In this document: piece by piece, positions 13,129 to 51,300 of the stretch
How positions within the stretch are numbered: position 1 is the first letter of the stretch
Layout of the letters: each line of letters opens with the position of its first letter
Source of the DNA: Hyphochytrium catenoides
Lineage: Eukaryota > Protista > Hyphochytriomycota
Direction of reading: 5' to 3'
Assembly (NCBI GenBank): GCA_900088475.1
Contig: FLMG01002723.1
Coordinates: 1 to 64,000 of the forward strand
DNA: 64,000 bases
Notes under the pieces: generated by a model
Database searches by the model: none
The model's input: only the letters and a program-made list of their open reading frames with translations
What the model was told of the DNA's origin: nothing
Translations under genes and position numbers: made by a program

Positions 13129-15629
13129 ATGGGGTTTCGCTGGTCAACGTTGCTACTTACTTTAGCGGCCACGGTGTTGCCAGTCTCCTGTGCGGAACGA
13201 CAACCGTCAGCTTCAATCCGAGGTAAGGCCCGCTCGCTCTCGCTCTATACTGGGACTTTGGTCTCTAATATAACCACCGAAGGCCTCCAGTCTGCCGAAC
13301 TGGATCAGAGCGGCCCTTTCCACTCAGCACTGCAGCAGACGATAGAGGTCCTCAACCTACAGAAAGAAGCCGAGGGCGACAGTGCAGTGTATGAGGCTGG
13401 CAGCATCACTGGCGGAACAGTCCATGCTCAAGAAGACGGAAATAGGTTCATATCTGCTCATAAGTGCTTCTCTTTCTCCCTCAGAAGCCTTTTCCATCCA
13501 TAGATCTCCTATGGGTTCTTGGCTTGCCGAGGCCGTTGACTTGTCTCTGTAGTCTCCCTCTGCCGCTCCTGGCTCTCCACTATGCGCTCTCAATCTCTCG
13601 GCCAGCCTCCATCCTTGCGCTATGACTAACATACTCTTGGGTACCAGATTTGTCCTCTTTGCCTTTGTGAAGGACTTACAGACTGAGGAGACCGCCGAGT
13701 ATCATATTGTTACCAAGTGCTTCTTCAACCGCCCTGCGCCATCATGTGTGGCGCAGAGCATGAAGCCTTTGAAGGCTAACATACAACAACCCCAAGATGC
13801 TGTTGTTGCTACCCCGGCACCAAAAGAGTCAGGTGCGAGAAATCGAGCCCTTTTCTCTATTGCTTGCTTACTAGGATATTGTCATCTCCTACAATGTTGC
13901 CGCCTCTAATTCAGCGCTTACTCCTGTTGGCGTGGTGATAGGTCATTGTCTGTCCTTCAGCCCATCTATTCTTGTCGGCGTTCGTCTATTTCTGACATTA
14001 TCTGCTGCCTCTCTGACTCCTCTATGACATGCAGGGCACGGGAGCACTCTCCTGCTTGCCATCGGCATTGCTTCAGGCGCAGCCGCTTTTCTGGTCATTG
14101 GAGCCATAGTCACTTCTGCGCCTCAGCGACGGCAGCTTGCGGAGGCTTTCGCAAAGCTACGAGGCAAAAGGAGACATTCCGACCTGGAGGAGGTGGAAAT
14201 CGAGTCTGCTCATGACGGGTCCATACATAAAGACAATTCAGACGGCCCTCCTTCCCGTGCGAGAGAGACGTTTCAAGACGCTTCTGACAACAATGCTCTC
14301 ATCATCAACGACAAGGAGAGACCCCAACACTCCTCATCTCCTCCCAAAAAGAAGATTGAGCTCTCCCTAGTGGCAGGTCAGGTGCACGGCACCCCCAAAC
14401 CCTTGGGATTGCATGATAGCTCTGCCGATGCTGGAACACTATTGTACAAGAACCAAACCGCCATCCTCTCGCCGGGCAAGAAAGCTCTCATCCTCGCTTC
14501 AGCGAAGGATGCCAGACTTCTGTCTCCAGTCGACAAAAGAAAGCAAATGCTATCACCTAAGAAGACTTCGGACCGGCCGTCTGCCAAAGGGAGCGAAGAA
14601 GCCGCTTCGCACCTGCCAGATGGTCTTCTGTCCTCGCTGGCTATAGCAGATCCCTCGACCGAGGAGTATGAGAAATTTTTGCACCACCTAAGGACCTCTG
14701 GATTGGACCTTATTAGGGTGAGGTTCTGTCTTCAATTATGCAGCTCTCTCTACTTCTACACCCATGACCTCGTTAAGGCTGAGATTCCTCCGCTCTCACA
14801 TTCGACGTGATTACCTATCTCTTACGCTTCTTCTCCTTCCCTCTCCACCGTCTGGTAGCATCGTCGCAACAAGAAAGTCAAGCGTATCAATCTTACTGCT
14901 GATGTGGGCCTGAATAAGCTCACTTGGGGGAAGAAGAAGCATAAGAAAGGCTCTAAGGTCAAGGAGATGAAGGCTGTCTGCAGAGGCCTCTCCACGGGAG
15001 TCTTTGAGAAGACAGGAGATAAAACAAAGGAAGCAGTCTATTTCTCTCTCATTTTCCCTGATACCTCACTTGACTTCGAAGTTACGTTGGCACAGGAAGC
15101 GGCATACTATGCGGGCTGTTTCAATAGGCTCATTCAGAGCCAAGAGCAAGCTATCCAACAAGGCGCCCAACCAGTCCTCTCTCCTCGGTCCTTAGAGGGC
15201 ACGGACAGTCAGCAGAGCCATCAGAGGGTAGAACATACTGATTTAGAGAAGAAGAGACGAGCGTCTCACTGCCTTCCTAAGGGCTTTGATGCGTTCGTCT
15301 CACTCCTTACCGCTCCTGAAGGGAGACCAGTGAAGAAACACCCCAGGCATGGAGAGCCAGAGGACAGAGTTCTCAAGCTGGACAGTTCTATGAAGCATCT
15401 TATCTGGTGTGATGGAGAAGGCAGCAAGAAGCACAGCATCCCAGTACTTAGCATTACTGAGGTGAAGCACGGACGGAGTACACAGGTGCTAGAGAAGACT
15501 GGAACATCAGAACGTGATCATCTCTACTTTTCCATTGTCTCGGAGTCAAGGACTTTGGACTTAGAGGTCTCAAGCAAAGAGGAGAGAGACTTTCTCGTAG
15601 CAGGATTTTCAACCCTCATCGAGTTAGCG
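13129..15629 (+). CDS. Type-I single-pass membrane protein: signal peptide, small ectodomain, TM helix, disordered linker, two tandem PH domains (3' end in the assembly gap)
   Basis: Signal peptide MGFRWSTLLLTLAATVLPVSCA. In-phase splices GNR|FVLFAFV (~13446-13648), KESG|HGSTLLLAIGIASGAAAFLVIGAIV (TM, then RRQ..KLRGKRR) and LIR|HRRNKKVKR. PH1 is LTWG..VKEMKAVCRG.STGVF..YFSLIF..SLDFEV. PH2 is KHPRHG..RVLKLD..LIW..SITEVKHGRST..YFSIVS..RTLDLEVSSKEERDFLVAGF. Confidence 0.75.
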
Positions 15630-15686
15630 NNNNNNNNNNNNNNNNNNNNNNNNNNNNNNNNNNNNNNNNNNNNNNNNNNNNNNNNN
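15630..15686. other. Assembly gap (57 N)
   Basis: Run of n in the sequence. Confidence 1.
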
Positions 15687-16741
15687 CACCGCATTTGTTA
15701 TCTACTATTTGTCACTCTGTGAGGGAGGTCTGTCAAGAACAACTACTGTCGATACTCTAATCTAATCAAAACACTTCTCCACGAGCATGGTACGCTTTCT
15801 GTTCCATCATAATATGCAAGGCAACCCTTGACTGGCTCTTCTATTGCTTGAGTTCCCGGAAGGCGTCTGCCCTTCCTACACTCTGTCTCTTCTGTACTAA
15901 GCTATTACCCTCCTCCCAAGCCATGCCCCTACCTCAGCATCTCTCTGAGTCTCCCTTCCTCTAATATCCCCATGCTAAGTGCGCTACCCAGTCCTTTATC
16001 CTATCCTCTTCGCTTTGGTCTGTCCTTCCGATTGTTTCGAAGAGTCCTATGTCACATGTAGCTGCCAGCCTTCTATAATGCTCAGAGGAGCGCATCTAAC
16101 TATCGGCCACACGGAGTAGTCTATTACGGCCAAGGGGACCACCGTCCAGTCATCTGTGAAAACTTTTTGCCTTCAAGAGGATCAGCAGATACTCTCACGT
16201 AGGCCTGTTTGAAGGATGTGGCCAGGAAGTGAGGTCAAGCGAAGCACAGGTTAACAAGATCATCAAGACTGCAGCGCCATACAAAGAACTAAGACCCCAC
16301 CGAATACCAGATCACACTTAAAACACTAAGGCGATGAGGCTAGTAGCAAGCTGAATATTCTAGATGTGGAGGAAGCGCCAAAGACAGATGAGTCGGTTAG
16401 GCTGCCAAAGGATTGGCTCGGTGACTGAAGCTCCGACCTCCCAGTTGGCTGCCCGCAGCTGGTCGCGGCCCTGGCGCCAGAGGCATGAGAACCAGACAGA
16501 GCCATCTTCTTACAGCTGGGATGAACCCAATTTAAATCATGTCGAAAACCAAACCCTCATGACTTTACCTCGAACTAGGCGATCCTGAGATGAATAAAAT
16601 GGTGATTACATTCAGATCTGTAGGAGGTCTTGGACCTTCTGGGAAAGGAGAGAGAAAAGGTTTGTAACGGCCGTGGGAGGAAGAGAAGGATTGTCCGTCA
16701 CGGGCTTCAGCAGCAAGGGAGCGGGACCGACAATGGCGCCC

Positions 16742-36681: not shown

Positions 36682-37666
36682 ACTTTGCGTATCCGTCTCT
36701 CGGTTCAGGTCCCCGCCTCTTACGTAGTCTTCTCTCTCGCTCGCAAGCCAAGCGGCTTTGTCAGTTGACTTAGAAAAGCAAAAAGCTTTTTGTACTCCCG
36801 CGATGTCCAGTTTCAAAGGCGCAATAAGCTGACTGGATAGGCCACGATTATGGGATCTTCTGTAGGCAAAGACGCCAGCAAGTAGGTGATGATATGCTCT
36901 CAAAGCCCGGGAGGGAGCCAGGGCACGAGGATGCGACCAGAACAGCCAAACCTTCCCACCGAACCCTGAAGGCAGAAAGCCAGCGCCCAGGGGATAGTGA
37001 CGCAGAGGAAGTTCAACTGTAGGTAAGCTAACCAATCAGCAGGCAAGCTCCTGTGACAAGCAAGCAGCGGCCAAGCCGCGGCCACGCCGCAGCCGCCACG
37101 GCATTGGGTTCGTGTTGCCGTTCTGATGAGCTTCAGAAGTGTCTGAAGGTTGAAGTTGTCAAAGGAGGAGCCGTTGTAGAACTGTGCACACCATCAATGA
37201 GACAGTAGAAACACTGTTGTGCGTTGTACGTGTACAGCCGCTATTAACCCTATAGGTAGGCTCAAAAAGGATAGAAAAGTGAGTGTTGGCGCGAAATTTC
37301 TGTTTTTTGTCCTACAAAGATCGCCGTACCCAAGGACAAAAATCTAAGAAAGCAGCAGCACAGATTTTGAAGATCAGCTGCCTTGGCAATCCTTCTCTGT
37401 GTGAGCTCTGATGCCAGAGTCATGGGATGTCTGGACAGGACAGGCCGCAATCAGGCGGAAGCAGTTATGGAGTGGAGATTCTGTTCGGAACGTCCTGAGG
37501 GAGAGCTATTGACTGTCACTGCCTTCTCAACTGAGACACTACCGCGCGCTGAGCCGAGGCTCGTGTACCCTAAAGCAAACGCACACTTCAGCTGCCTTCA
37601 GCCGCCTTCGTCAGCCTCTAGGACCGGAAGTTACCTTGCTGAGAGAAGGAGGAAGATAAGGAGAAG

Positions 37667-40600
37667 ATGTGGTCCAGATCCTCAACCCACGGTATCAATG
37701 CGCACATGCGGGATGATGAAAGTGATGACGAGGCCTATGAAGATGCCAAGCTTTGTGCTTTGTTATACGATGGCATAGAGCCTGAAGATGACGCTGGATC
37801 ACTTGATAGTAACGGATGGCAAAGGGTGGAAAACATTGTGACCAGTATTGAGGTTGATGCCTGTGACAAATACCTCCTTGATGAGACTCTTGCTGAGACG
37901 GAAGCTGTGGTGAGTAGACTTGAAAGTCAGATGTTTCAACAGACTCCCGCTCCTCGAGAGCTAACGACGGTGGCTGAAGATGAGTTTGTTAGGTTTTGGC
38001 TAGACCCTGACTTCTTGGGGTGCATGCTCAGCTTTCTCAATCAGCACCTCCAGCAAGAAGCTTCTCGGGCTGAGCTTTTATCATTCATTAAGATCGAACT
38101 CTGGCTGATGGTCTACAATATCAGTGCTTCAGCCTTTTTTGACCCGGAAGCCTCCATGGGCTATCCAAGGGCTGCATTTGTGATGGCAGAGAAGCGCTAT
38201 TTCGAACTCCTGAAGGCTCTGGGTGGAGGGATGCTGGCTAACAGGGACGTTGCGGAGCCACAGTGGACAGAGCCCATAGAAGATGACAGGCACGTGGCAG
38301 AGGCGATGGACATAATCCGTAGGAAATGTGCCAGGATTGGCTACGTGAAGGGAATCTCAATTCTGGCGATAAATGATGATCTCATGCGGACTCGGAAACT
38401 CGAACGACTAAAACAAGGCCAGTGCATACAGTTTGGCATGCATGTTAATGGGTAATGACGCTGTACAAATGGAGAAAGGGTTCAATTGACAGAAAGGGAG
38501 AGAGAGAGAGAGGAGAGAGTTACGAAGAAGGAGAGAGACACAGAGGGACTGACGGAGAGAGAGAGACACAAAGAGACTGGCATAAAACCATAGGGAGTGG
38601 CTGTTGACAGGAAGGACAGGAAGCCCTGGCGACGACGGGGTGTAAGGATGTACTGGCTGCTGACTAATGGCTCTCCTATCACTCAACAGTTTGGGCGCTG
38701 TCCACCATGGGGCCGTGGTCTCCCTACGAACAGGGTTATATCTGGGAGGATTTGTTGATTCTGGGGTTGAGTCAACCTTGGATTGTGTGGAAGTCCTCCG
38801 AAGGTCTCTTGACAGCGCCAGTGCCAATGAAATCGTGGAGTTGCCTAACCTATTAGCTTGGGATCGGTGCTACGGCAACAACGCAGCGGGGATCACTCTC
38901 AAAGCTATAAAGAACGGCTTTGATCTGTTAGGGACGACCCAGCGTATCAACTCCTTCCCATTTACCTTCGGTCAAGGAGCGAGAGATTCCCAAGTTGAGG
39001 TGGAAGTGGCTGGAGGCCAAGCAGCGTACTGGTGCCGACGGGAGTTGGAAGGCCCGCAAGGGACACACAAATGGCAGTATGCTATGGCCTATCGGACAGG
39101 CGGGGGTAAGGTTGCGCTTGCGCAAACGACTCTTGAGCATCTCGCTGGTCCCGGGAAGTGGACCTACGTGCCTGCGTTTCAGGAGGATAGCGACGATCTA
39201 CCTTCTGAACCACTGTTCCGACTGTTTGAACTGAAAAAGGTCCAGCCTCTCACGGCGGCCCAGAGAACTCCCGACTGGTCCCTATTGCAAAAGTTCAGGG
39301 TAACGGAGTTGATTGCAGGTTCTATATGGCAAGCTCTAGCCAGTGTCGATCTCTTGAAGACCCAGGAAGAGCAAGATCATCAACTTAGGGAGGGACGGAG
39401 AGCGTGCGCTTCAGGAAGCCGAGAGCCCAACCGGTCATCTGCTGCTGGTAAACTCGAAGCATCCTATAAAAGGGTTCTGCAGATGCTACGGATAGGTATC
39501 CCGTCGACCAATACCCTAGATGCGAATGCTGAGCAAGATGCACCGTCCGTCACTTTAGAGGGGCTCCAGCAGTTGAAAGTTGATAACGGACTGGACGAGG
39601 TATGTGGGGTAAACACTATAGGGATCACCGGTAACAAAGAAGCTTTGACAGGAAGGATAATGAGGGCACCGAAGAGAGTTAGAGGTCGGAATGGTGAAAT
39701 TGAGGTTAACCTGGGACATACTTTCCTTAAGAAGTGGTTCCGAGAACCATTCAAGGGTTCCTACGTCTGCTCAAGAGAAGCAGAAGTGCGGTCTTTTAAT
39801 GAGGCCGAAGCCCTTAAGGACTTACCACGCTTCATTCGTCTCCACTGCCCGCGTCTGGATAGGGCTTCTGGATCTGGAACACATGTGATAGGTTGTGGAC
39901 TTCTGGTTAAAGCCATAAAGGAGTATGGGCTCCTCTCTACCCGCAATTGCCCGGAAGCGGCTTTCTCTCCCACTGCAATGATGATCATGGAGTCTTCTGA
40001 AGCCGGCAACTTTTTAGCTGGGGTTACGATACATTATACGAAGGGCATGAGAGACAGCAAAGAGGCGGAGGAACGTCGGTTGGAAAAGGAATATGGGAGG
40101 TATGTGAGAGCCTCTTTGTCTTTTGATCCGGAGCACCTGCAGCAACTAGTTCCCAATGTGGAGTATCGATCGCAGCTTCTGCATAGTATGGCCTGTGCTG
40201 GGGTGACGGACTGGTTCTATGTGGGTCTTTCACTCAACAATATCATCCGTGTGGTTCACGTGACCATCGGTGAAGAAGACATAGAACTTTACTCAGGTGC
40301 TGTTGCCTCCCTAAAAGAAAAGTACTTCCAGTGGGTGTATGATCCTGCTGCCCAGATTCCTGACTCGCTTTTGGCCGACGGGCGAAGTTTGGGAACTGGT
40401 GTAGATCGTTACACGGCCACAGAGACTCTTCATATGTGGCGAGTTCTCAATGAAATGGTCCTGGCGCGCGGACGCCCTTTTCCACCAGCTCTGCACCTGG
40501 TCCCGACCCTAATAGCGACACGGAGCCAAGTGGAGGCCGGCATTGAGCGGTTCAGACGCCACCGTGCTAACGATAGCATATTGCAAAGGAAGCTACACCC

Positions 40601-41540
40601 AATGGCACAGATATGGTTGAGAATGCTGAGGGCCCTCATTTATAACGCGCATCAGTCCCACATCCTCTTTCAGGTATTCCAGACACTCTCTGACCTCTAC
40701 TCTTCTTGTTTTCTCCAATTATAACACGTCCTACGTCCCATTGTTCCCCTTGCTATGTCTACCCTCGGACCGTGGCCAGACAATCGAGATGCTGAAGGAC
40801 TCCAGTCGATGTAAGAGCTTTAGGGAGTTCCAAGAAGCTAGAAGTCGTCCTCCGGGCAGTTTTATGCATTTCCTTGGGAAAGTGGTGCATTCTAGCGAGT
40901 TTGACGACTTCAGCATCACGCACAACCCGGGATCTCCGGACAGGAGCCAATTACGGCCAGCAAGGGTTAACGAAGCTCCTGCTTCCACTCAACTAGCTAA
41001 GGAGGTCCATGATTTGATGGCTAACTGCAAGTACAAGAAGGCCCAAGCGTTCAGCAAAGGCCCCTCTTATTTAAGGCTGACCGGGAGTCATCAACAGGTC
41101 AGAGTTCAAAGTTTCTAGTGCGTCGTTGTAAACCGAAACACTTACTTCAAATCTACTTCTGTTGCCTGACTTTGTTGGTGAATTAGGCATTACTTTCACC
41201 GGATATGGCGGCCAGGATACAGGCGAGATGTATCCTTTGCTGTGGTCGCCACCACGTAATCCGCAGCAGAGACCTTGATCCTTTTGAGACAGCACATAGC
41301 AGGCAAGGCTACAAGACCATGTTTGGTTGCGTCGAGTGTAAGGTCGCCCTCTGTGCGAGAAAGGAGAGGTGGAATGGAAAGAGTTGCTTTGACATCTTCC
41401 ACTCTGAGGAATCTTTGCCGAATCCCTGCTTGCGTCCAGAAGGGAATAGCGGGCTGATACAGAGTGACAGTACAACACACCATCCCCGCTCTTCCGGCCC
41501 TCCTTCTGGGAATCGAAAGAGAAAAGCGGGAACTAGGTAG
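37667..41540 (+). CDS. piggyBac-like (DDE_Tnp_1_7) transposase-derived protein with inserted YqaJ/lambda-exonuclease-like domain, SAP-like motif and C-terminal Cys-rich domain; 4 exons, about 1134 aa
   Basis: Exons 37667-38451, 38690-40673, 40780-41097 and 41223-41540 join in phase through GT-AG introns. piggyBac-like blocks: ELLSFIKIELWL, RYFELLKAL, ILAINDDLM (D1 region), LAWDRCYG (D2), LLGTTQR, IATRSQVEAGIERF (YN..KGGVD equivalent), LIYNAHQ and RCILC..KTMFGCVECKVALC..SCFDIFH. YqaJ-like blocks: QRTPDWSLLQKFRVT, EYGLL..P.AAFSPTA, YRSQLLHSMA..WFYV. Confidence 0.75.
38495..38575. repeat. GA-rich low-complexity tract in intron 1 of the transposase-derived gene
   Basis: Directly visible. Confidence 0.8.
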
Positions 41541-42449: not shown

Positions 42450-43606
42450 CTATATAACATTTCTCTTCATGATGAAGTGATTGGTCCGCTCATAATAAGG
42501 AAGTTCCCTGTCTCGGCGCTCCTGGTCCTCGGTATCAAGACGCTTTATCTACAGTGACAGCAGTCAAGGCCTATCAGCTGACAATCGTCGTTCCCATGAC
42601 AGTATGGATAGAACCTACCAGATTTCGGGACAGGATGATGAGCAGCGTTGATAGGAAGACCAGACCTGTGGCACCAATAATAGCAAAGAAGCCATAGCCA
42701 TACTTCCAGACCGTACAAGAAGTCCCAGAGGCGGCACAGGACTTTTCAATGAGCTCCTTTAATGTGAGAAATGTTGTCCGGCTACCCGCGTTGTTGATGA
42801 GTTCTGAGATGGGAACCTCACCCAGGTTCGTGTGCATGAGGTACCATGTAACTATAGCCCCTGCACCAGCAATGGCTATGGAATTGAACATCAGCATTAG
42901 AGGCGGAAATCAAGGAGAGAAAGCCTTGAAGTCTCATGACGGGATAAAGTGAGAATTCAGGCAATGGTTACGCCGAACATGTAAAAAGAGATAAAGTGGA
43001 CGGAGTACGTACTTGCCACGCCGCCTAGGAAGTAGATGCATGAAAGCCGCACAGTGACGCTGCTTATATCATTGATAATGACAAAGATGATGGCAGTCAT
43101 TACAGCAGTACAACATACGCCTATTATGGCGCCAATGAGAGGGGCTAAGCGGACATTGCAAGCCGTGGTGATCGCATCACTCTCTCCTTCTTCGGAGACT
43201 TCGGCAAAGGAGTCTCTAGCAGAAGTGATTGGAAAGTTATCACTGTAGAATTGACAGTGAGTTAGTCTGGGGCCCCATTGGCTTTACATATAGTAAGACG
43301 CTTACCAAAACGCGTTCCACTTCTCGGACTTCTTCTGGTCTCCAAAGAACCTGAAAGGAAGTCCAACCTGAGGGACCACGCACTGTTCAACTCCCATAAT
43401 ATTACTCGTGTTCCAAAGGCCCCAGACATCCAAATGTAGCTTATACCCCGTGGGGCAGCTGTCTATAGGGGGCATGTCCATCCCCACAGTCCAGACTGGA
43501 GAGATCGTGGCTGCAAGGAAGGCACCAAATGCCAGAAGCGAGAACGTGAAGGCTACGGAAGGGTTACTATCCATACAGCAGCAAGCGAATGGCACAATAG
43601 CATCTA
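42450..43606 (-). CDS. Claudin/PMP22-like four-TM protein (5' exon(s) unresolved)
   Basis: TM1 VAFTFSLLAFGAFLAATISPVW, then WGLW...C (claudin W-GLW-C signature). TM2 LIGAIIGVCCTAVMTAIIFVII, TM3 LSCIYFLGGVA|TIAGAGAIVTWYL, TM4 YGYGFFAIIGATGLVFLSTLLIIL. The final exon RNL|IKRLDTEDQERRD..RNVI has its stop at 42450-42452. Confidence 0.65.
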
Positions 43607-47552: not shown

Positions 47553-48371
47553 CTAGAAGCACTGAGAAGTGGCAACTAAACTCATGGCGATCTCTGCCAG
47601 ATCAGCGTCATCAATAGTCTCAAACAGTAAGAGACTATCGTCAGTATTAACGTCTGGATCGATGAGATTTGGTTGTTCACACTGAGAGAGCTCCACTACT
47701 CTGAATGGGCTTTTTTCTAGCTCTCCTTGAGCCCTAGGGAGAGAAAGTAAGCCTGAAGTGAGGCCACTAGTACTGCTTACATCTTGCTGGTTTTGGATAC
47801 TTGAGAGACAGGGGGCCAGGAAATCGTCGTCACATCCTGTCAGGAGATAATCCCACAGGGCAGCGGTTGATGGTGTCCGGACTAACTCTGACTTGACAGT
47901 TACGGGACTGGAGCAGATCAGTGAATCTTTGAACTGCCTTTTAGGCGCTACTGTCTGTTCTGGAGATAATACTGCAGCGAGAGGTCTCTTCCTTGAGCCT
48001 TTGTTTCTCTTCGGATACTCCCGCCCGCTGCACTTGACGCACAAGCTGCCCGCAACTTGTGGGCAATTCTTATGGCACTTCCGGCACTTGGGCTTCTTAT
48101 CAGGGGAAAGATGTCTTTGGCAAAGACCCTCTCTTCCTCTTGCGACCCTGCCGCAGTCTGGCACTGAGCACAGGGTGCGGCCATTCTTGACCAGTCTTTG
48201 CATTCTTTGTTGTGGTTGTTCGGCTCCAAAATCCTGCATAACGCTAGTGGGGCTTGCCAATGGTGATGTGCACCCGCTTTCCAATTTTATAGGGCAGTAG
48301 TGTACCGTAGGGATCTGAATGTTAGCTTCAAAGAGATAATTTGTAACTGGGAGGAGGCATGATTGCGCCAT
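47553..48371 (-). CDS. WRKY19-like Cys/His zinc-finger protein, putative transcription regulator (intronless)
   Basis: CSVPDCGRVARGREGLCQRH and CRKCHKNCPQVAGSLCVKC, followed by the basic NLS-like PKRNKGSRKRP and an acidic tail. The first ATG of the long ORF is at 48371. Confidence 0.6.
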   Translation of the reverse strand: MAQSCLLPVTNYLFEANIQIPTVHYCPIKLESGCTSPLASPTSVMQDFGAEQPQQRMQRLVKNGRTLCSVPDCGRVARGREGLCQRHLSPDKKPKCRKCHKNCPQVAGSLCVKCSGREYPKRNKGSRKRPLAAVLSPEQTVAPKRQFKDSLICSSPVTVKSELVRTPSTAALWDYLLTGCDDDFLAPCLSSIQNQQDVSSTSGLTSGLLSLPRAQGELEKSPFRVVELSQCEQPNLIDPDVNTDDSLLLFETIDDADLAEIAMSLVATSQCF

Positions 48372-51300
48372 GGTGATGGTTTCGTCTGGGTTAGACTGCT
48401 TGAGACGAGCTGAGGTTACAGAAGAAAGCTTTCGAATGGTTGGGTTTCCCACACGCTGGTTGCGCTGTCCCAAGATATTCAACCTTATGCGTTATTCTTA
48501 GAGAGCAAGTGTCTGGATCATGGCAATTGAGAGAATGAGCAGAGAAGGTTTGGTCCTCCTCTCCTGCGTTCTCGATCCACTGCCTAGGTAGAGACAGGGG
48601 AGACGGCGCAGGTGCCTCTTTGACCAGGAACATGGGAAGATGCATCCATCATCACGTCAGCTCCATCGAACCTCGATATTCATACTAATCCCTGCTGTAG
48701 CAGTGCCGCAAAGACCAGTTGGACACCTTTCTTCTTCTTCTTACCCTTCCATGGGTCCCTTCTTCCCCCAGATCATCTCAAGATCTTATGTCCTATAGAA
48801 CCCCTGACAATAATATGCCTGTCTTTGTCATCTCCTGCTAGCGTTTCTTCCTCCCCCTTCATAAAGATGTCCTGTGTAACCAACAAGGCTCTTTCTCTGT
48901 AAGCACTGCTTGCTCTTCCTCTCTCTTCTAGGCCTCTCTCTTCCCCTTCCTTGGCCCCGCAAGAGCTCTGTACAGTATAGAGTCAAACTGTCAGACAGGC
49001 CTGACAGTCGTAAGAGTGGGTGGGCCTTTTGATAAATACAGGTAATAATCTATGAGGAACTTGGGTAGGTAGCAGCAACCTAATAAAGGTTGCGGGACAA
49101 TAAATCCAATCAAGTTCACCCTTTTAGCCTCTATTTCCCTGTACCGAATTAGTACTTTTTAGAACTGACCAGTACCCTGACAAGGCCATCAAAAGGACTT
49201 AGATCCCTGCACTCTGATTGGCCGTAAATAAATTTCTGGACGTGTTGGTGTTCTTCTTTGGCGACACCCTCTCAGCATAGTGAGTATGACAGTTCTAGAG
49301 TTTGGGGGTCTAGTTGTTCTAATTCTGTACCTCTCTTCGCATGTAATAACCCTTTTGCTGTCCAGATGCTGGGCCTCGAGCACGGGAATAATCACCATAA
49401 AGTAGAGCGAATAAGCAAGAAACGGCACCACTGTCACTTTGGCTCTCAAAAATTCACTTTCTTCCAATCAGCGCCCAGCACAACTGATCTTGATTGATCA
49501 GAAGAAACTTAGGTTCCCCGTTAGCGGCTATGTTCTGTGAAACCTAGCATTCCGATTGGCTAATAATCGTCTTAGTCGCGGGAACAGGCTGGTCAAAGCT
49601 CATCGTTTCCTCCCCAGTTTCCCTTCCTCCATTTTTTGCATCATAGTGCCTCCTAACGCTCTCGCAGAGAAAGACTGCCGTAGGAGATAGAGGTGGATAA
49701 AGTAATAGCTATGGACTAGACTGAGACAGAGACTTTACCAAGGTACCCAAACAACCAAGTTCAAACTGCCCTGTTGCTTAGTTCTTTGTCGTCATCCATG
49801 TCCAGGAGATGGAAAGTCACCTGACAACAACAGGGAAGGACAGGGACCGATAGCAGGAACCACAGGTAATAGCCGTTGCTCGGCCGCTTTCATAGAACTA
49901 CGACTCTAGAGAAGTGGGGGAGGTGAGAGAGGCGATCTGATGACGAGCTCAGTGAATGAAATGGAGAATCCTCTTTCCTTGACAAGAAATCTTCTTCAAG
50001 CTGAATGATGGTCTCCGTTCCGACCATCATCTTGAACGCATCATTAAGAATCAATCTCCAGTAATACTTCCTGCAACAGTTCATTATGAGGTGCAATTTC
50101 TGTGCTCCAGGCTCCAGACAGCACTACTTGCTAGTCAAATCATGATCCTGTTCTTCTGGTCATTATCGACCATCTAAGAACCTTGCAATCTGGGATGAGG
50201 TTCTTTTGAGGCTCTAACCCAGATGCAGAAGTGGATTGAATGGCTCTTACACTGCTCACTAAGGACTGTAGCTTCCTAGTAGTGTAACACCACAGTCGCA
50301 CGCAGGCACCAGCATCAATAAAAAAATGATAGCTCGATCGACCTCAACGTCTGACTTGCATGGTCAAGATAATGAGCATAAACCAGAGTCAAAGAAATAC
50401 GGAGACACTGGACTTATCACTTAGTTTCCTGAGCGGCCCGGGAGTAAGAGCCGTCTTAGCTCCATTAGTTGCAAGGACGCTAAATAGAGCTAACTTCTTG
50501 TGGCCTCCTGCCATTGATTCAATTGTATCCCTCCAATCCTGGATATACCTCGAGGGCTAAGATTCTGGTTTGCAGGGCTTTAGCAGAAGAAGAGAAGAGA
50601 TAGAAAATGACTGCATGACAGGAATTCTGGTGATAGAGCACATGCTGTTAAGAAGAGGTACGCCTGAGTACTCCCAATGGGATGCAAGCAGAAGATGGTG
50701 ATACCTCTGAAAGGGGGTGATCAAAGCAATGCTTTGCCAGCTAAGGAGCTCTCTTACAAATAGGGCACTGCTTGCAAACCCTTCAGCCGGTCTCTGAACG
50801 AAGTGAAACTCTATTTATTATTTGTAAGCATGCGAAGCTAGAGGAAGTAGCTAGATTCTCGTTGATGCGTCATCTTCTAAAGATGCTCTTCAACTAGTAA
50901 TTTCGGGGCTTGTGCAGGTGGCATTAGCGCCAGAAACGGTTACTACCTCTCCAAGGCGTCGTAAAGGACCGCTGATAGAAAGAAATCTGAAGAAGAGCCG
51001 AGCCATTATGGCAGATCTTTGCAATTAGACTAATCTTCCGTCGTGTTAAGAAGCATGGAGTAGGGGGAACGAAAAAACGTGTCTGAGAGTACCATCAAGG
51101 GAAGCAGTTGACTCAAAAGCGTAAGCCGCTAATAAGAGAATTTATAACCTGTTCCCCCCAACCCACCCCCAACCTATTAAGAGTCGAGAGGCAGCATCTG
51201 TAGGGATCTCCTCATAAATGATGGGAAACTGGATACACTGAGGTAGAAGAAAGGACCTTGTCAGGGAGTTGGCATAGAGAGGAGACTCTTTCTTCCTTTT

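What the first reader, a model, noticed from the sequence alone, without database searches (positions are those of the whole stretch)
37667..41540. piggyBac-type transposase with a YqaJ/lambda-exonuclease domain and SAP motif nested inside its catalytic core
Seen: four ORF fragments splice in phase into one ~1134-aa protein. The order is: piggyBac N-terminal helices; D1 block ILAINDDLM (~38360); D2 block AWDRCYG (38862) and GTTQR; an insert of about 350-400 aa; D3 block IATRSQVEAGIERF (~40510-40555); LIYNAHQ; and a C-terminal CxxC..CxxC..LC..CF..FH domain. The insert begins QRTPDWSLLQKFRVT (39261, cf. YqaJ Qrs.eW...R..riTaS). It contains a SAP-like LQQLKV..LDEVC..IGITGNKEALTGRI (~39560-39660), then EYGLL..P..AFSP (39921-39971) and YRSQLLHSMA..WFYV (40164-40223), the later YqaJ motifs. 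Established: ordinary piggyBac transposases are DDD enzymes with a Cys-rich C-terminal DNA-binding domain and no exonuclease; YqaJ/lambda exonucleases are 5'-3' resecting nucleases used in viral recombination. Inference: this derives from a transposon lineage that couples strand transfer to end resection in one polypeptide. It may belong to a divergent piggyBac group already in repeat databases; I cannot check that here.
Basis: partly seen in the sequence, partly recalled or inferred. Interest (0 to 1): 0.85.

Follow-up and report, generated by a model that had tools for sequence, protein, structure and literature searches.

The report
Dead piggyBac transposase with built-in exonuclease
This four-exon gene descends from a widespread and apparently undescribed group of piggyBac jumping genes whose cutting enzyme has a lambda-exonuclease-type nuclease built into its core, but this copy has lost both active sites and its transposon ends while staying under selection, so it is most likely a domesticated DNA-binding protein.

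Summary
Four + strand exons (37667-38451, 38690-40673, 40780-41097, 41187-41540) join through three in-phase GT-AG introns into a 1146-aa protein. It is colinear with intronless relatives (32% identity, E 2e-168).

Structure models show a lambda-exonuclease/YqaJ fold nested inside a piggyBac catalytic core:
- Lambda exonuclease: Z 14.4 for the window's exon 2 and 15.0 for relative P0001.
- piggyBac: Z 25 for P0001.
- A SAP motif sits inside the exonuclease domain, and a Cys-rich domain lies at the C-terminus.

Intact relatives number 333 clusters at E<=1e-30, including Plasmodiophora and a chytrid. They are real piggyBac-type transposons with CCC...GGG inverted ends and TTAA-type target duplications at different insertion sites.

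The window copy is different:
- D1 is N, and D3 is E in a wrecked motif.
- The exonuclease D, E and K are T, T and H.
- No inverted ends were found.
- The reading frame, both folds and the zinc ligands are kept.
- Strain differences are 26 synonymous to 13 non-synonymous (27 non-synonymous expected, P about 1e-5), and clear indels lie only in introns or the UTR.

Best reading: a domesticated, non-catalytic derivative.

The scan noted this same stretch before (s1-333919). It also noted similar genes on two other pieces of this genome (s1-331043, s1-333878). No RNA run could be listed.

The parts
37667..38451 (+). Exon 1 (aa 1-261 plus 2 nt). It holds an acidic N-terminus, the piggyBac N-terminal helical (DNA-binding/dimerisation) region and the D1 block ILAINDDLM.
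   Evidence: ORF; weak PF13843 match, E 1e-3; colinear with P0001; the P0001 model aligns to piggyBac 6x67 from residue 61.
38452..38689 (+). Intron 1, GT-AG, 238 nt, with a GA-rich microsatellite.
   Evidence: It is the only in-phase donor/acceptor pair. A GA insertion at 38554 in other runs lies inside it.
38690..40673 (+). Exon 2. It holds the rest of RNase-H core part 1 (D2), the piggyBac insertion domain, the nested exonuclease domain with SAP, and core part 2 (D3 block, LIYNAHQ).
   Evidence: AF2 model mbc1ee9cf16fb has pLDDT 82.4. VIA gives Z 14.4 to 1avq and Z 11.0-11.3 to 6x67/9c0f.
40674..40779 (+). Intron 2, GT-AG, 106 nt, phase 0.
   Evidence: An 8-nt deletion at 40703 in run X3 lies inside it.
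40780..41097 (+). Exon 3, a linker region (CKSF...F motif) between the core and the Cys-rich domain.
   Evidence: It aligns to the same region of P0001, P0005 and P0006.
41098..41186 (+). Intron 3, GT-AG, 89 nt, phase 0.
41187..41540 (+). Exon 4, with the C-terminal Cys-rich domain, a basic tail and the stop codon.
   Evidence: All Cys/His ligand columns of the family are kept. The neighbouring ORF of relative P0002 carries PF13842 zf-Tnp_2.
38372..38374 (+). Codon 236, the D1 position of the piggyBac triad. It is Asn here.
   Evidence: The column is Asp in 33 of 33 relatives; block table.
38862..38864 (+). Codon 320, D2 of the triad. It is kept as Asp (AWDRCYG).
   Evidence: Invariant column.
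40545..40547 (+). Codon 881, the D3 position. It is Glu here, and the flanking WN..KGG motif has become RS..EAG.
   Evidence: D, N, W and K are 94-100% conserved in relatives and all four are changed here.
39237..40454 (+). Nested lambda-exonuclease/YqaJ-type PD-(D/E)xK domain (aa about 445-850).
   Evidence: Window model residues 188-593 of exon-2 ORF numbering match 1avq, 3slp and 6m9k at Z 14.3-14.4, with 203-206 of about 228 residues aligned. The family insert profile matches mimivirus R354 at E 6e-5 and LHK-Exo at E 1e-3.
39570..39680 (+). SAP-like helix-turn-helix inside the exonuclease domain. It is degenerate in this copy.
   Evidence: Pfam finds no SAP in the window ORF. The stretch aligns to the SAP of relatives: PF02037 in 19 of 36, best E 2e-10. 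The family profile matches the Ku70 SAP at E 2.4e-11. Conserved L563 and K578 are kept.
39972..39974 (+). Codon 690, the Asp of the SPD motif of the PD-(D/E)xK site. It is Thr here.
   Evidence: Asp in 33 of 33 relatives. It aligns to the SPDG motif of R354.
40026..40034 (+). Codons 708-710, the ExK of the PD-(D/E)xK site. It reads T-I-H here.
   Evidence: E and K are invariant in 33 of 33 relatives.
39288..39290 (+). Codon 462, the invariant Arg of the N-terminal QRTPEWF.LR motif. It is Gln here.
   Evidence: Arg in 33 of 33 relatives. That it corresponds to the 5'-phosphate-binding Arg of lambda exonuclease comes from my memory and was not tested.
41214..41387 (+). Cys-rich zinc-binding domain (CxxCC...H...CxxC...LC...C....H).
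   Evidence: Ligand columns are kept relative to 24 relatives. The P0001 model aligns to piggyBat through residue 1056.

Best explanation
The locus is a single four-exon gene for a 1146-aa protein. It descends from a lineage of piggyBac-superfamily transposons with an unusual transposase.

In that lineage, a lambda-exonuclease/YqaJ-type PD-(D/E)xK nuclease is inserted after the piggyBac insertion domain and just before the element that carries the third catalytic Asp. The nuclease itself is interrupted by a SAP DNA-binding motif. Intact members keep both active sites and move as TIR elements with TTAA-type target duplications.

The window copy has lost catalysis in both nucleases:
- piggyBac site: D1 to N, and D3 to E within a destroyed motif.
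- Exonuclease site: D to T, E to T, K to H, and the conserved Arg to Gln.
- It has also lost its transposon ends.

It keeps both folds, the zinc-binding C-terminal domain and an open frame under purifying selection. It is therefore most likely a domesticated, non-catalytic DNA-binding or scaffold protein.

Inferred, not shown: it may act on or with the intact sister elements reported elsewhere in this genome. That could be as a partner, as the catalytically dead PiggyMac-like proteins are to PiggyMac in Paramecium, or as a repressor that competes for their ends.
For: Gene model:
- Three in-phase GT-AG introns; the protein is colinear with P0001 over 1127 residues.

Folds:
- The P0001 model (pLDDT 81.8) matches piggyBac 6x67_C at Z 25.0 over model residues 61-935 and lambda exonuclease 1avq_A at Z 15.0 over 431-816. 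Foldseek gives E 9e-7 and 9e-4.
- The window exon-2 model (pLDDT 82.4, pTM 0.82) matches lambda exonuclease at Z 14.4 and piggyBat/piggyBac at Z 11 on both sides of the insert.

Profiles:
- PF13843 E 3e-9 and SAP E 5e-7 in P0001.
- The insert profile matches Ku70 SAP at 2e-11, R354 nuclease at 6e-5 and LHK-Exo at 1e-3.

Relatives are transposons:
- P0001 element: TTAA|CCCCAATAAATT...AACTTATTGGGG|TTAA with different flanks in L008-L011.
- P0009 element: CCCCAATCC ends with different flanks in L003-L005.
- P. brassicae copy: TTAC|CCCTGGC...GCCAGGG|TTAC.

Loss in the window copy:
- 13 of 41 family-conserved columns are changed. These include 7 of the 14 columns that are invariant in 33 relatives, namely all catalytic ones except D2.
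- No TIR, no subterminal motif, and a single copy in the window.

Selection:
- Of the strain/allele differences listed, 26 are synonymous and 13 non-synonymous, against 27.2 non-synonymous expected (P about 1e-5).
- Clear indels lie only in introns 1 and 2 and 6 nt after the stop.
- Zinc ligands are all kept.
Against: - No RNA run could be listed, so splicing and expression are not shown directly.
- The differences come from assembled contigs of 2-3 DNA runs under one species label. Twelve further differences were not displayed, and a close paralogue cannot be fully excluded as their source.
- One low-depth contig (X3, depth 2.2 of 10.5) lacks one base at 39725 inside exon 2.
- No orthologue in a related species was found, so the age of the inactivation is unknown.
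- N-D-E could in principle retain some activity, since non-canonical residues have been proposed for PGBD5.
- A TTAA|CCC site 420 bp upstream (37244) could be a relic left end, which would also fit a transposon copy inactivated not long ago.
Confidence: 0.68

Rival explanations
1. It is a transposon fossil: a copy of the piggyBac-exonuclease element that was inactivated fairly recently and is decaying neutrally. Its frame would still be open only by luck.
For: Catalytic residues and ends are lost. A possible relic left end, TTAA|CCCTATAGG, lies at 37244, with an inverted 10-mer pair at 37304-37342. One low-depth contig has a 1-nt deletion in exon 2.
Against: The 3441-nt frame is open across three in-phase introns, although 7 of 14 invariant positions have changed. 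There is a two-fold deficit of non-synonymous differences (P about 1e-5), and clear indels lie only in introns or the UTR. All zinc ligands and most structural residues are kept. The terminal branch (1.24) is at the median of the family tree, not extreme.
Confidence: 0.18
2. It is an active autonomous transposase that cuts, pastes and resects DNA ends with both nuclease domains.
For: All domains of the intact family are present in the right order and are predicted to fold. D2, the exonuclease NE motif and the Y.xQ..H motif are kept.
Against: D1 is Asn, D3 is Glu with the WN..KGG context lost, and the exonuclease D/E/K are T/T/H. All of these columns are invariant in 33 relatives. No terminal inverted repeats, target duplication or further copy were found in 64 kb.
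Confidence: 0.04
3. It is a domesticated gene that keeps one non-canonical catalytic activity. For example, N-D-E or other residues could still cleave DNA, so it would act as a host nuclease rather than a pure DNA binder.
For: D2, the neighbouring DD of the D1 block, and a carboxylate at D3 (Glu) remain. There is purifying selection on the whole protein. Domesticated piggyBac proteins with atypical residues have been proposed to be active (literature knowledge, not tested here).
Against: The residues around D3 that are 94-100% conserved in the family are all replaced. The exonuclease site lacks three of its four acidic/basic residues.
Confidence: 0.1

Closest known systems
piggyBac superfamily transposases (Trichoplusia ni piggyBac, PDB 6x67; piggyBat, 9c0f; Pfam DDE_Tnp_1_7 PF13843 plus zf-Tnp_2 PF13842)
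   Same: Shared features are the N-terminal helical domain, the RNase-H-like DDD core with insertion domain, and the C-terminal Cys-rich domain. Relatives have CCC...GGG ends and TTAA-type target duplications.
   Different: A domain of about 400 aa (exonuclease plus SAP) is inserted just before the D3 element. The window copy has N-D-E instead of DDD, has no ends, and scores below the Pfam threshold (18.9 against 22.4 bits).
Lambda exonuclease / YqaJ family (PDB 1avq, 3slp; LHK-Exo 3syy; mimivirus R354 5yet; Pfam PF09588)
   Same: The same fold over about 205 of 228 residues (Z 14-15). In intact relatives the motif order is also the same: the N-terminal W...R...T(S/T) helix, then G..NE, S(P/V)D, E.K and Y..Q..H.
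   Different: Here it is not a free toroidal exonuclease but a domain nested in a transposase. It carries a SAP-containing insert of about 100 aa after its first helix. Pfam YqaJ is only weakly matched (best E 0.02 in 3 of 36 members). In the window copy D, E, K and R are replaced.
[quoted passage not shown]
   Same: A cut-and-paste DDE transposase is associated with a lambda-exonuclease-like nuclease. Kolobok also targets TTAA.
   Different: These belong to different superfamilies. There the nuclease is a separate protein or a C-terminal addition, not nested inside the catalytic core, and no SAP is reported.
Domesticated piggyBac genes: PGBD1-5 in vertebrates, PiggyMac and the catalytically dead PiggyMac-like partners in Paramecium (table in PMC5381638; the PgmL point is from my own knowledge)
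   Same: A transposase-derived host gene with introns, lost ends, altered catalytic residues, a retained Cys-rich domain and purifying selection.
   Different: None of those carries a nested exonuclease or SAP. Orthology, expression and function are not established here.

Membership tests
piggyBac superfamily (transposase) | RNase-H-like catalytic core with the piggyBac-specific N-terminal and insertion domains (fold) | tested here: met
   The P0001 model matches 6x67_C at Z 25.0, rmsd 3.4 over 373 residues, spanning model 61-935. The window exon-2 model matches 9c0f_D and 6x67_C at Z 11.3 and 11.0 on both sides of the insert.
piggyBac superfamily (transposase) | Pfam DDE_Tnp_1_7 (PF13843) above the gathering score | tested here: inconclusive
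   Window exon 1 scores 18.9 bits against a cut-off of 22.4 (E 1e-3). Relative P0001 scores 37 bits (E 3e-9). Seven of 36 members match, best E 2.4e-10.
piggyBac superfamily (transposase) | Catalytic DDD triad | tested here: not met
   The window has N236, D320 and E881, and the WN..KGG context of D3 is lost. Relatives are D-D-D in 33 of 33.
piggyBac superfamily (transposase) | C-terminal Cys-rich zinc-binding domain | tested here: met
   All Cys/His columns are kept. PF13842 is on record for the ORF next to P0002. There was no direct Pfam hit on the window exon 4.
piggyBac superfamily (transposon) | Terminal inverted repeats starting CCC and a TTAA target site duplication | tested here: not met
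   None was found around the window gene. The only trace is a lone TTAA|CCC at 37244. The feature is met in relatives L002, L003-L005 and L008-L011.
Lambda exonuclease / YqaJ PD-(D/E)xK nucleases | Lambda-exonuclease fold | tested here: met
   The window model matches 1avq_A, 6m9k_B and 3slp_A at Z 14.3-14.4 with 203-206 residues aligned. P0001 matches at Z 15.0.
Lambda exonuclease / YqaJ PD-(D/E)xK nucleases | Sequence-profile membership (Pfam PF09588 or significant match to solved members) | tested here: inconclusive
   Pfam YqaJ is below threshold: best E 0.02 in 3 of 36 members, and no hit for the window. The family insert profile matches R354 at E 6.4e-5 and LHK-Exo at E 1.1e-3 in the PDB sequence set.
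Lambda exonuclease / YqaJ PD-(D/E)xK nucleases | Catalytic Asp and Glu-x-Lys | tested here: not met
   The window has T690, T708 and H710. Relatives have D, E and K in 33 of 33.
Lambda exonuclease / YqaJ PD-(D/E)xK nucleases | 5'-3' exonuclease activity on double-stranded DNA ends | not testable with these tools
   This needs a biochemical assay, for the intact relatives as well.
SAP domain | Pfam PF02037 match | tested here: inconclusive
   There is no hit on the window ORF at E<=1. Nineteen of 36 relatives match, best E 2.2e-10. The family profile matches Ku70 SAP at 2.4e-11. The window stretch aligns to it with L and K kept.
Domesticated transposase gene | Immobile single locus under purifying selection with an intact frame | tested here: met
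   It is a single copy without ends. There are 26 synonymous and 13 non-synonymous differences, P about 1e-5, and clear indels lie only in introns or the UTR.
Domesticated transposase gene | Syntenic orthologues in related species; expression | not tested
   No close orthologue was returned (best 34% identity). No RNA run could be listed.

The most novel reading that the evidence does not exclude
The gene marks an undescribed and widespread clade of two-nuclease piggyBac transposons, found in plasmodiophorids, chytrids and many environmental eukaryotes. In this clade a lambda-type 5'-3' resection module with its own SAP DNA clamp is built into the transposase core. That would couple TTAA excision to end resection and recombinational repair. 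The window's copy would be a host-recruited, nuclease-dead paralogue that partners with or restrains the active sister elements of the same genome.
Probability: 0.3. Interest if true: 0.8.

Novelty: new variant of a known kind. Interest (0 to 1): 0.66.

Why it matters
piggyBac is a model cut-and-paste transposon and a widely used genome-engineering tool. It is known for seamless excision that needs no end processing.

This lineage has a lambda-exonuclease-type nuclease and a SAP motif folded into the catalytic core. It is conserved over hundreds of sequence clusters and still mobile. That suggests a different way of handling the double-strand breaks of transposition, by resection toward recombination. 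It joins ISL2EU and KolobokE as a third, structurally distinct case of a DDE transposase recruiting this nuclease.

The window's copy adds a likely domestication event in which both nuclease sites died while the DNA-binding scaffold was kept. This resembles the catalytically dead partners of PiggyMac. It gives a concrete pair of proteins, intact and dead, for testing what the nested nuclease does.

I found no description of this architecture in the papers I could search. Public records call members only 'hypothetical', 'SAP domain-containing' or 'YqaJ viral recombinase domain-containing' proteins. Repbase and Dfam could not be checked.

Tried and rejected
- Pfam on the four window pieces gave only a sub-threshold PF13843 hit on exon 1. 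It gave nothing for YqaJ, SAP or the zinc finger.
- A single-sequence search of exon 2 against PDB sequences gave only noise.
- The whole-protein family profile against PDB sequences found only SAP domains. The insert had to be profiled on its own.
- The ESM Atlas look-up gave no usable hit; scores were at most 0.66.
- RNA runs: none could be listed for 4 kb or for the 2-kb exon.
- Inverted-repeat searches of 13 kb and of the near flanks of the window gene gave only chance-level pairs.
- A directed search for CC-starting ends with equal flanks gave nothing convincing.
- The subterminal TTATYCYW motif of relatives is absent near the gene: one match in 64 kb, at 15995, against 3.8 expected.
- I tried to place the organism from neighbouring ORFs by Pfam. 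The results were uninformative, and the organism stays coded as 'organism A'.
- Whether the dead chytrid member P0031 is the window protein's sister could not be resolved; the tree shows an open polytomy with long branches.
- I considered an assembly chimera and rejected it. The locus is held by three DNA runs, and the domain order is shared by more than 30 relatives.
Full report
**1. What is in the sequence.**
Four open pieces lie on the + strand at 37667-38455, 38667-40724, 40741-41118 and 41205-41540. Reading the three frames at each gap shows canonical introns:
- GTAATG...CAACAG, 38452-38689, 238 nt.
- GTATTC...GGCCAG, 40674-40779, 106 nt.
- GTCAGA...AATTAG, 41098-41186, 89 nt.

For intron 1 only one donor/acceptor pair restores the frame. 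The spliced CDS is 3441 nt and encodes 1146 aa.

The protein aligns end to end with the intronless 1117-aa relative P0001 (residues 17-1143 against 7-1084, 32% identity, E 1.7e-168). It aligns similarly with the Plasmodiophora brassicae protein P0007. The exon model is therefore supported by colinearity across all three junctions.

**2. The family.**
A word-indexed search with exon 2 found six proteins at 31-34% identity over 96-98% of the query. An exhaustive profile search of 1.84 billion cluster representatives found 2183 proteins at E<=1e-3, 1071 at E<=1e-10 and 333 at E<=1e-30. Many are 1000-1400 aa long and cover the whole profile.

Named members:
- 'hypothetical protein PBRA_003430' / 'SAP domain-containing protein' of Plasmodiophora brassicae.
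- A hypothetical protein of the chytrid Dinochytrium kinnereticum.

In AlphaFold DB clusters the best structural neighbours of the P0001 model include an 881-aa unnamed protein (E 9.5e-74). They also include a 1022-aa 'YqaJ viral recombinase domain-containing protein' aligned over model residues 59-1117. Automatic annotation has therefore seen pieces of this architecture.

**3. Domain identities.**

Pfam:
- P0001 matches DDE_Tnp_1_7 (E 3.1e-9), SAP (E 5.5e-7) and, weakly, YqaJ (E 0.16).
- Over 36 members, SAP hits 19 (best 2.2e-10), DDE_Tnp_1_7 hits 7 (best 2.4e-10), YqaJ hits 3 (best 0.02) and zf-Tnp_2 hits 1.
- The ORF following P0002 on its contig carries zf-Tnp_2.

A profile of the insert alone (31 members) against PDB sequences:
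- Ku70 SAP domain, E 2.4e-11.
- Mimivirus R354 nuclease, E 6.4e-5, aligned over the EYGLL...SPDG...EIK stretch.
- LHK-Exo, E 1.1e-3, aligned over the N-terminal motif.

Structure of P0001 (AlphaFold2 model, pLDDT 81.8, pTM 0.76):
- Foldseek finds piggyBac 6x67_C (E 9.4e-7), piggyBat 9c0f and lambda exonuclease 3slp/1avq (E about 1e-3) as top PDB hits.
- VIA-align gives Z 25.0 to 6x67_C, with 373 residues at rmsd 3.4 and model range 61-935.
- VIA-align gives Z 15.0 to lambda exonuclease 1avq_A, with 208 of 228 residues and model range 431-816.

Structure of the window's own exon-2 ORF (pLDDT 82.4, pTM 0.82):
- Lambda exonuclease at Z 14.3-14.4, ORF residues 188-593.
- piggyBat/piggyBac at Z 11.0-11.3, over ORF residues 2-675, on both sides of the insert.

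By sequence alignment the insert follows the piggyBac insertion-domain strands and precedes the WN..KGG.D block that carries D3. The SAP-containing segment lies between the exonuclease's first helix and its G..NE motif.

**4. The intact relatives are transposons.**
A directed search for CC-starting ends that are reverse complements, checked for equal flanks, gave the following:
- The P0001 element is bounded by TTAA|CCCCAATAAATT ... AACTTATTGGGG|TTAA (L008 118-4360, 4243 bp). Its flanks differ among L008, L009, L010 and L011.
- The P0009 element is bounded by CCCCAATCC ends, with flanks that differ among L003, L004 and L005.
- The P. brassicae copy is bounded by TTAC|CCCTGGCTTTTT ... AAAAAGCCAGGG|TTAC (L002 7736-11566). 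It sits between ordinary host genes.

These are the hallmarks of the piggyBac superfamily. A published survey also records rare non-TTAA sites such as TTAT and ATAA (PMC5381638). Inside the ends lie inverted pairs of a TTATYCYA motif, and their arrangement is conserved between L001 and L002.

**5. The window copy is different.**
In a 35-sequence alignment, 41 columns are at least 85% conserved among 33 relatives. The window keeps 28 of them. Of the 14 columns that are invariant in the relatives, 7 are changed:

| Position | Role | Family | Window |
|---|---|---|---|
| 236 | piggyBac D1 | D | N |
| 881 | piggyBac D3 | D | E |
| 874 | N of the WN motif | N | S |
| 462 | Arg of the exonuclease N-terminal motif | R | Q |
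| 690 | SPD Asp | D | T |
| 708 | ExK Glu | E | T |
| 710 | ExK Lys | K | H |

The W and K that flank D3 are also replaced. In contrast, D2, the structural Gly/Trp/Ser/Pro/Leu columns, the NE and Y.xQ..H motifs and all zinc ligands of the C-terminal domain are kept.

No terminal inverted repeats, target duplication, subterminal motif or second copy were found. A lone TTAA|CCCTATAGG at 37244, with an inverted 10-mer pair 60 bp further in, might be a relic of a left end. It has no right-hand counterpart.

In a maximum-likelihood tree the window protein sits in a well-supported 12-member clade (100/99). That clade includes the P0001, P0009 and P. brassicae elements. The window protein's terminal branch is 1.24, against 0.79-1.21 for those intact clade-mates.

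**6. Selection.**
Three DNA runs under the same species label hold the locus. Their contigs differ from the window at 52 places, of which 40 were listed. Against the exon model, 26 are synonymous, 13 non-synonymous and 1 intronic. There are 787 synonymous and 2651 non-synonymous sites, so pN/pS is about 0.15. Placing the same mutation types at random in the CDS predicts 27.2 non-synonymous changes, and the chance of 13 or fewer is about 1e-5.

Indels:
- A GA unit in the intron-1 microsatellite (38554).
- 8 nt in intron 2 (40703).
- One C six bases after the stop (41546).
- One single-base deletion at 39725 in a low-depth contig (2.2 of 10.5).

Caveats: these are assembled contigs, not reads. 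Twelve differences were not shown. A very close paralogue cannot be strictly excluded as their source.

**7. Interpretation.**
Shown:
- The architecture and both folds.
- The transposon nature of the intact relatives.
- The loss of catalytic residues and ends in the window copy.
- The deficit of amino-acid-changing differences.

Inferred: the gene is a domesticated, non-catalytic derivative that works through DNA binding (SAP, Cys-rich domain, N-terminal helices) or as a scaffold.

A role as partner or antagonist of intact sister elements is suggested by two things, and it is untested. The first is the earlier scan notes of complete copies elsewhere in this genome (s1-331043, s1-333878), which I did not verify. 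The second is the precedent of dead PiggyMac-like partners, which I know from the literature.

For the intact lineage, a lambda-type 5'-3' exonuclease inside the transposase most plausibly resects donor or transposon ends toward recombinational repair. This too is inference. [quoted passage not shown]

**8. Novelty.**
Full-text searches found no description of a piggyBac with a nested exonuclease. The term combinations were piggyBac with YqaJ, with lambda exonuclease, with SAP domain and with exonuclease domain, and YqaJ with DNA transposons. The 2017 survey of the superfamily states that sequences with long insertions were not retained (PMC5381638).

Repbase and Dfam could not be consulted. 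I therefore rate it a new variant of a known kind, not categorically new.

The same stretch was noted once more by the scan as 'both nuclease active sites eroded ... likely domestication' (s1-333919). I tested that reading here and it holds.

Noticed in passing
L001 8383-8470 and 11953-12290; L002 7749-7835 and 11324-11549; L003 1196-1270: Just inside the ends of intact relatives lie inverted pairs of an 8-11 nt motif (TTATCCTAGA, TTATCCCA or TTATTCTA). In L001 and L002 the upstream arrangement is identical: one pair spaced 13, then a second pair spaced 23 that starts 55 bp later. One pair plus single sites lie downstream. In 18-19 kb the motif clusters almost only in the gene's flanks. They are probably transposase (Cys-rich domain?) binding sites.
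   Followed up: partly
window 37244-37259 and 37304-37342: TTAA|CCCTATAGG lies 420 bp upstream of the ATG. TTAACCC occurs only 3 times in 64 kb counting both strands. An inverted pair TTTTTGTCCT/AGGACAAAAA lies 60 bp further in. Together they could be the relic of a left transposon end. No right-end counterpart was found; the best candidate, at 43470, is at noise level.
   Followed up: partly
P0031 (Dinochytrium kinnereticum, KAJ3209788.1): This is a second family member with both active sites degraded: D1 block DGD, D3 to S, SPT instead of SPD, and MIR instead of ExK. It has also lost the Cys-rich domain. Whether it is sister to the window protein is unresolved, so it may be an independent inactivation or domestication.
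   Followed up: partly
L002 (P. brassicae CP145414.1 1116100-1135377): The P. brassicae element is 3.8 kb with TTAC duplications and all catalytic residues intact. It sits in a gene-dense region between an RNase_T gene and other host genes, in a very compact genome. It may be a recent or still active insertion.
   Followed up: partly
window 38480-38580: A GA-rich microsatellite inside intron 1 varies in length between sequencing runs (a GA unit is inserted at 38554), and contigs break there.
   Followed up: no
L012 699-3734 (NCBI assembly GCA_965193775.1, contig CBCZYV010000290.1): A copy at least 90% identical to the P0009 element is split into two adjacent ORFs of 815 and 195 aa. It is therefore a broken copy of an otherwise intact element family.
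   Followed up: no
window 47553-48482 (-) and 14904-15722 (+): The ORF at 47553-48482 has a sub-threshold WRKY19-type zinc finger match (E 3.6e-5).
   Followed up: no
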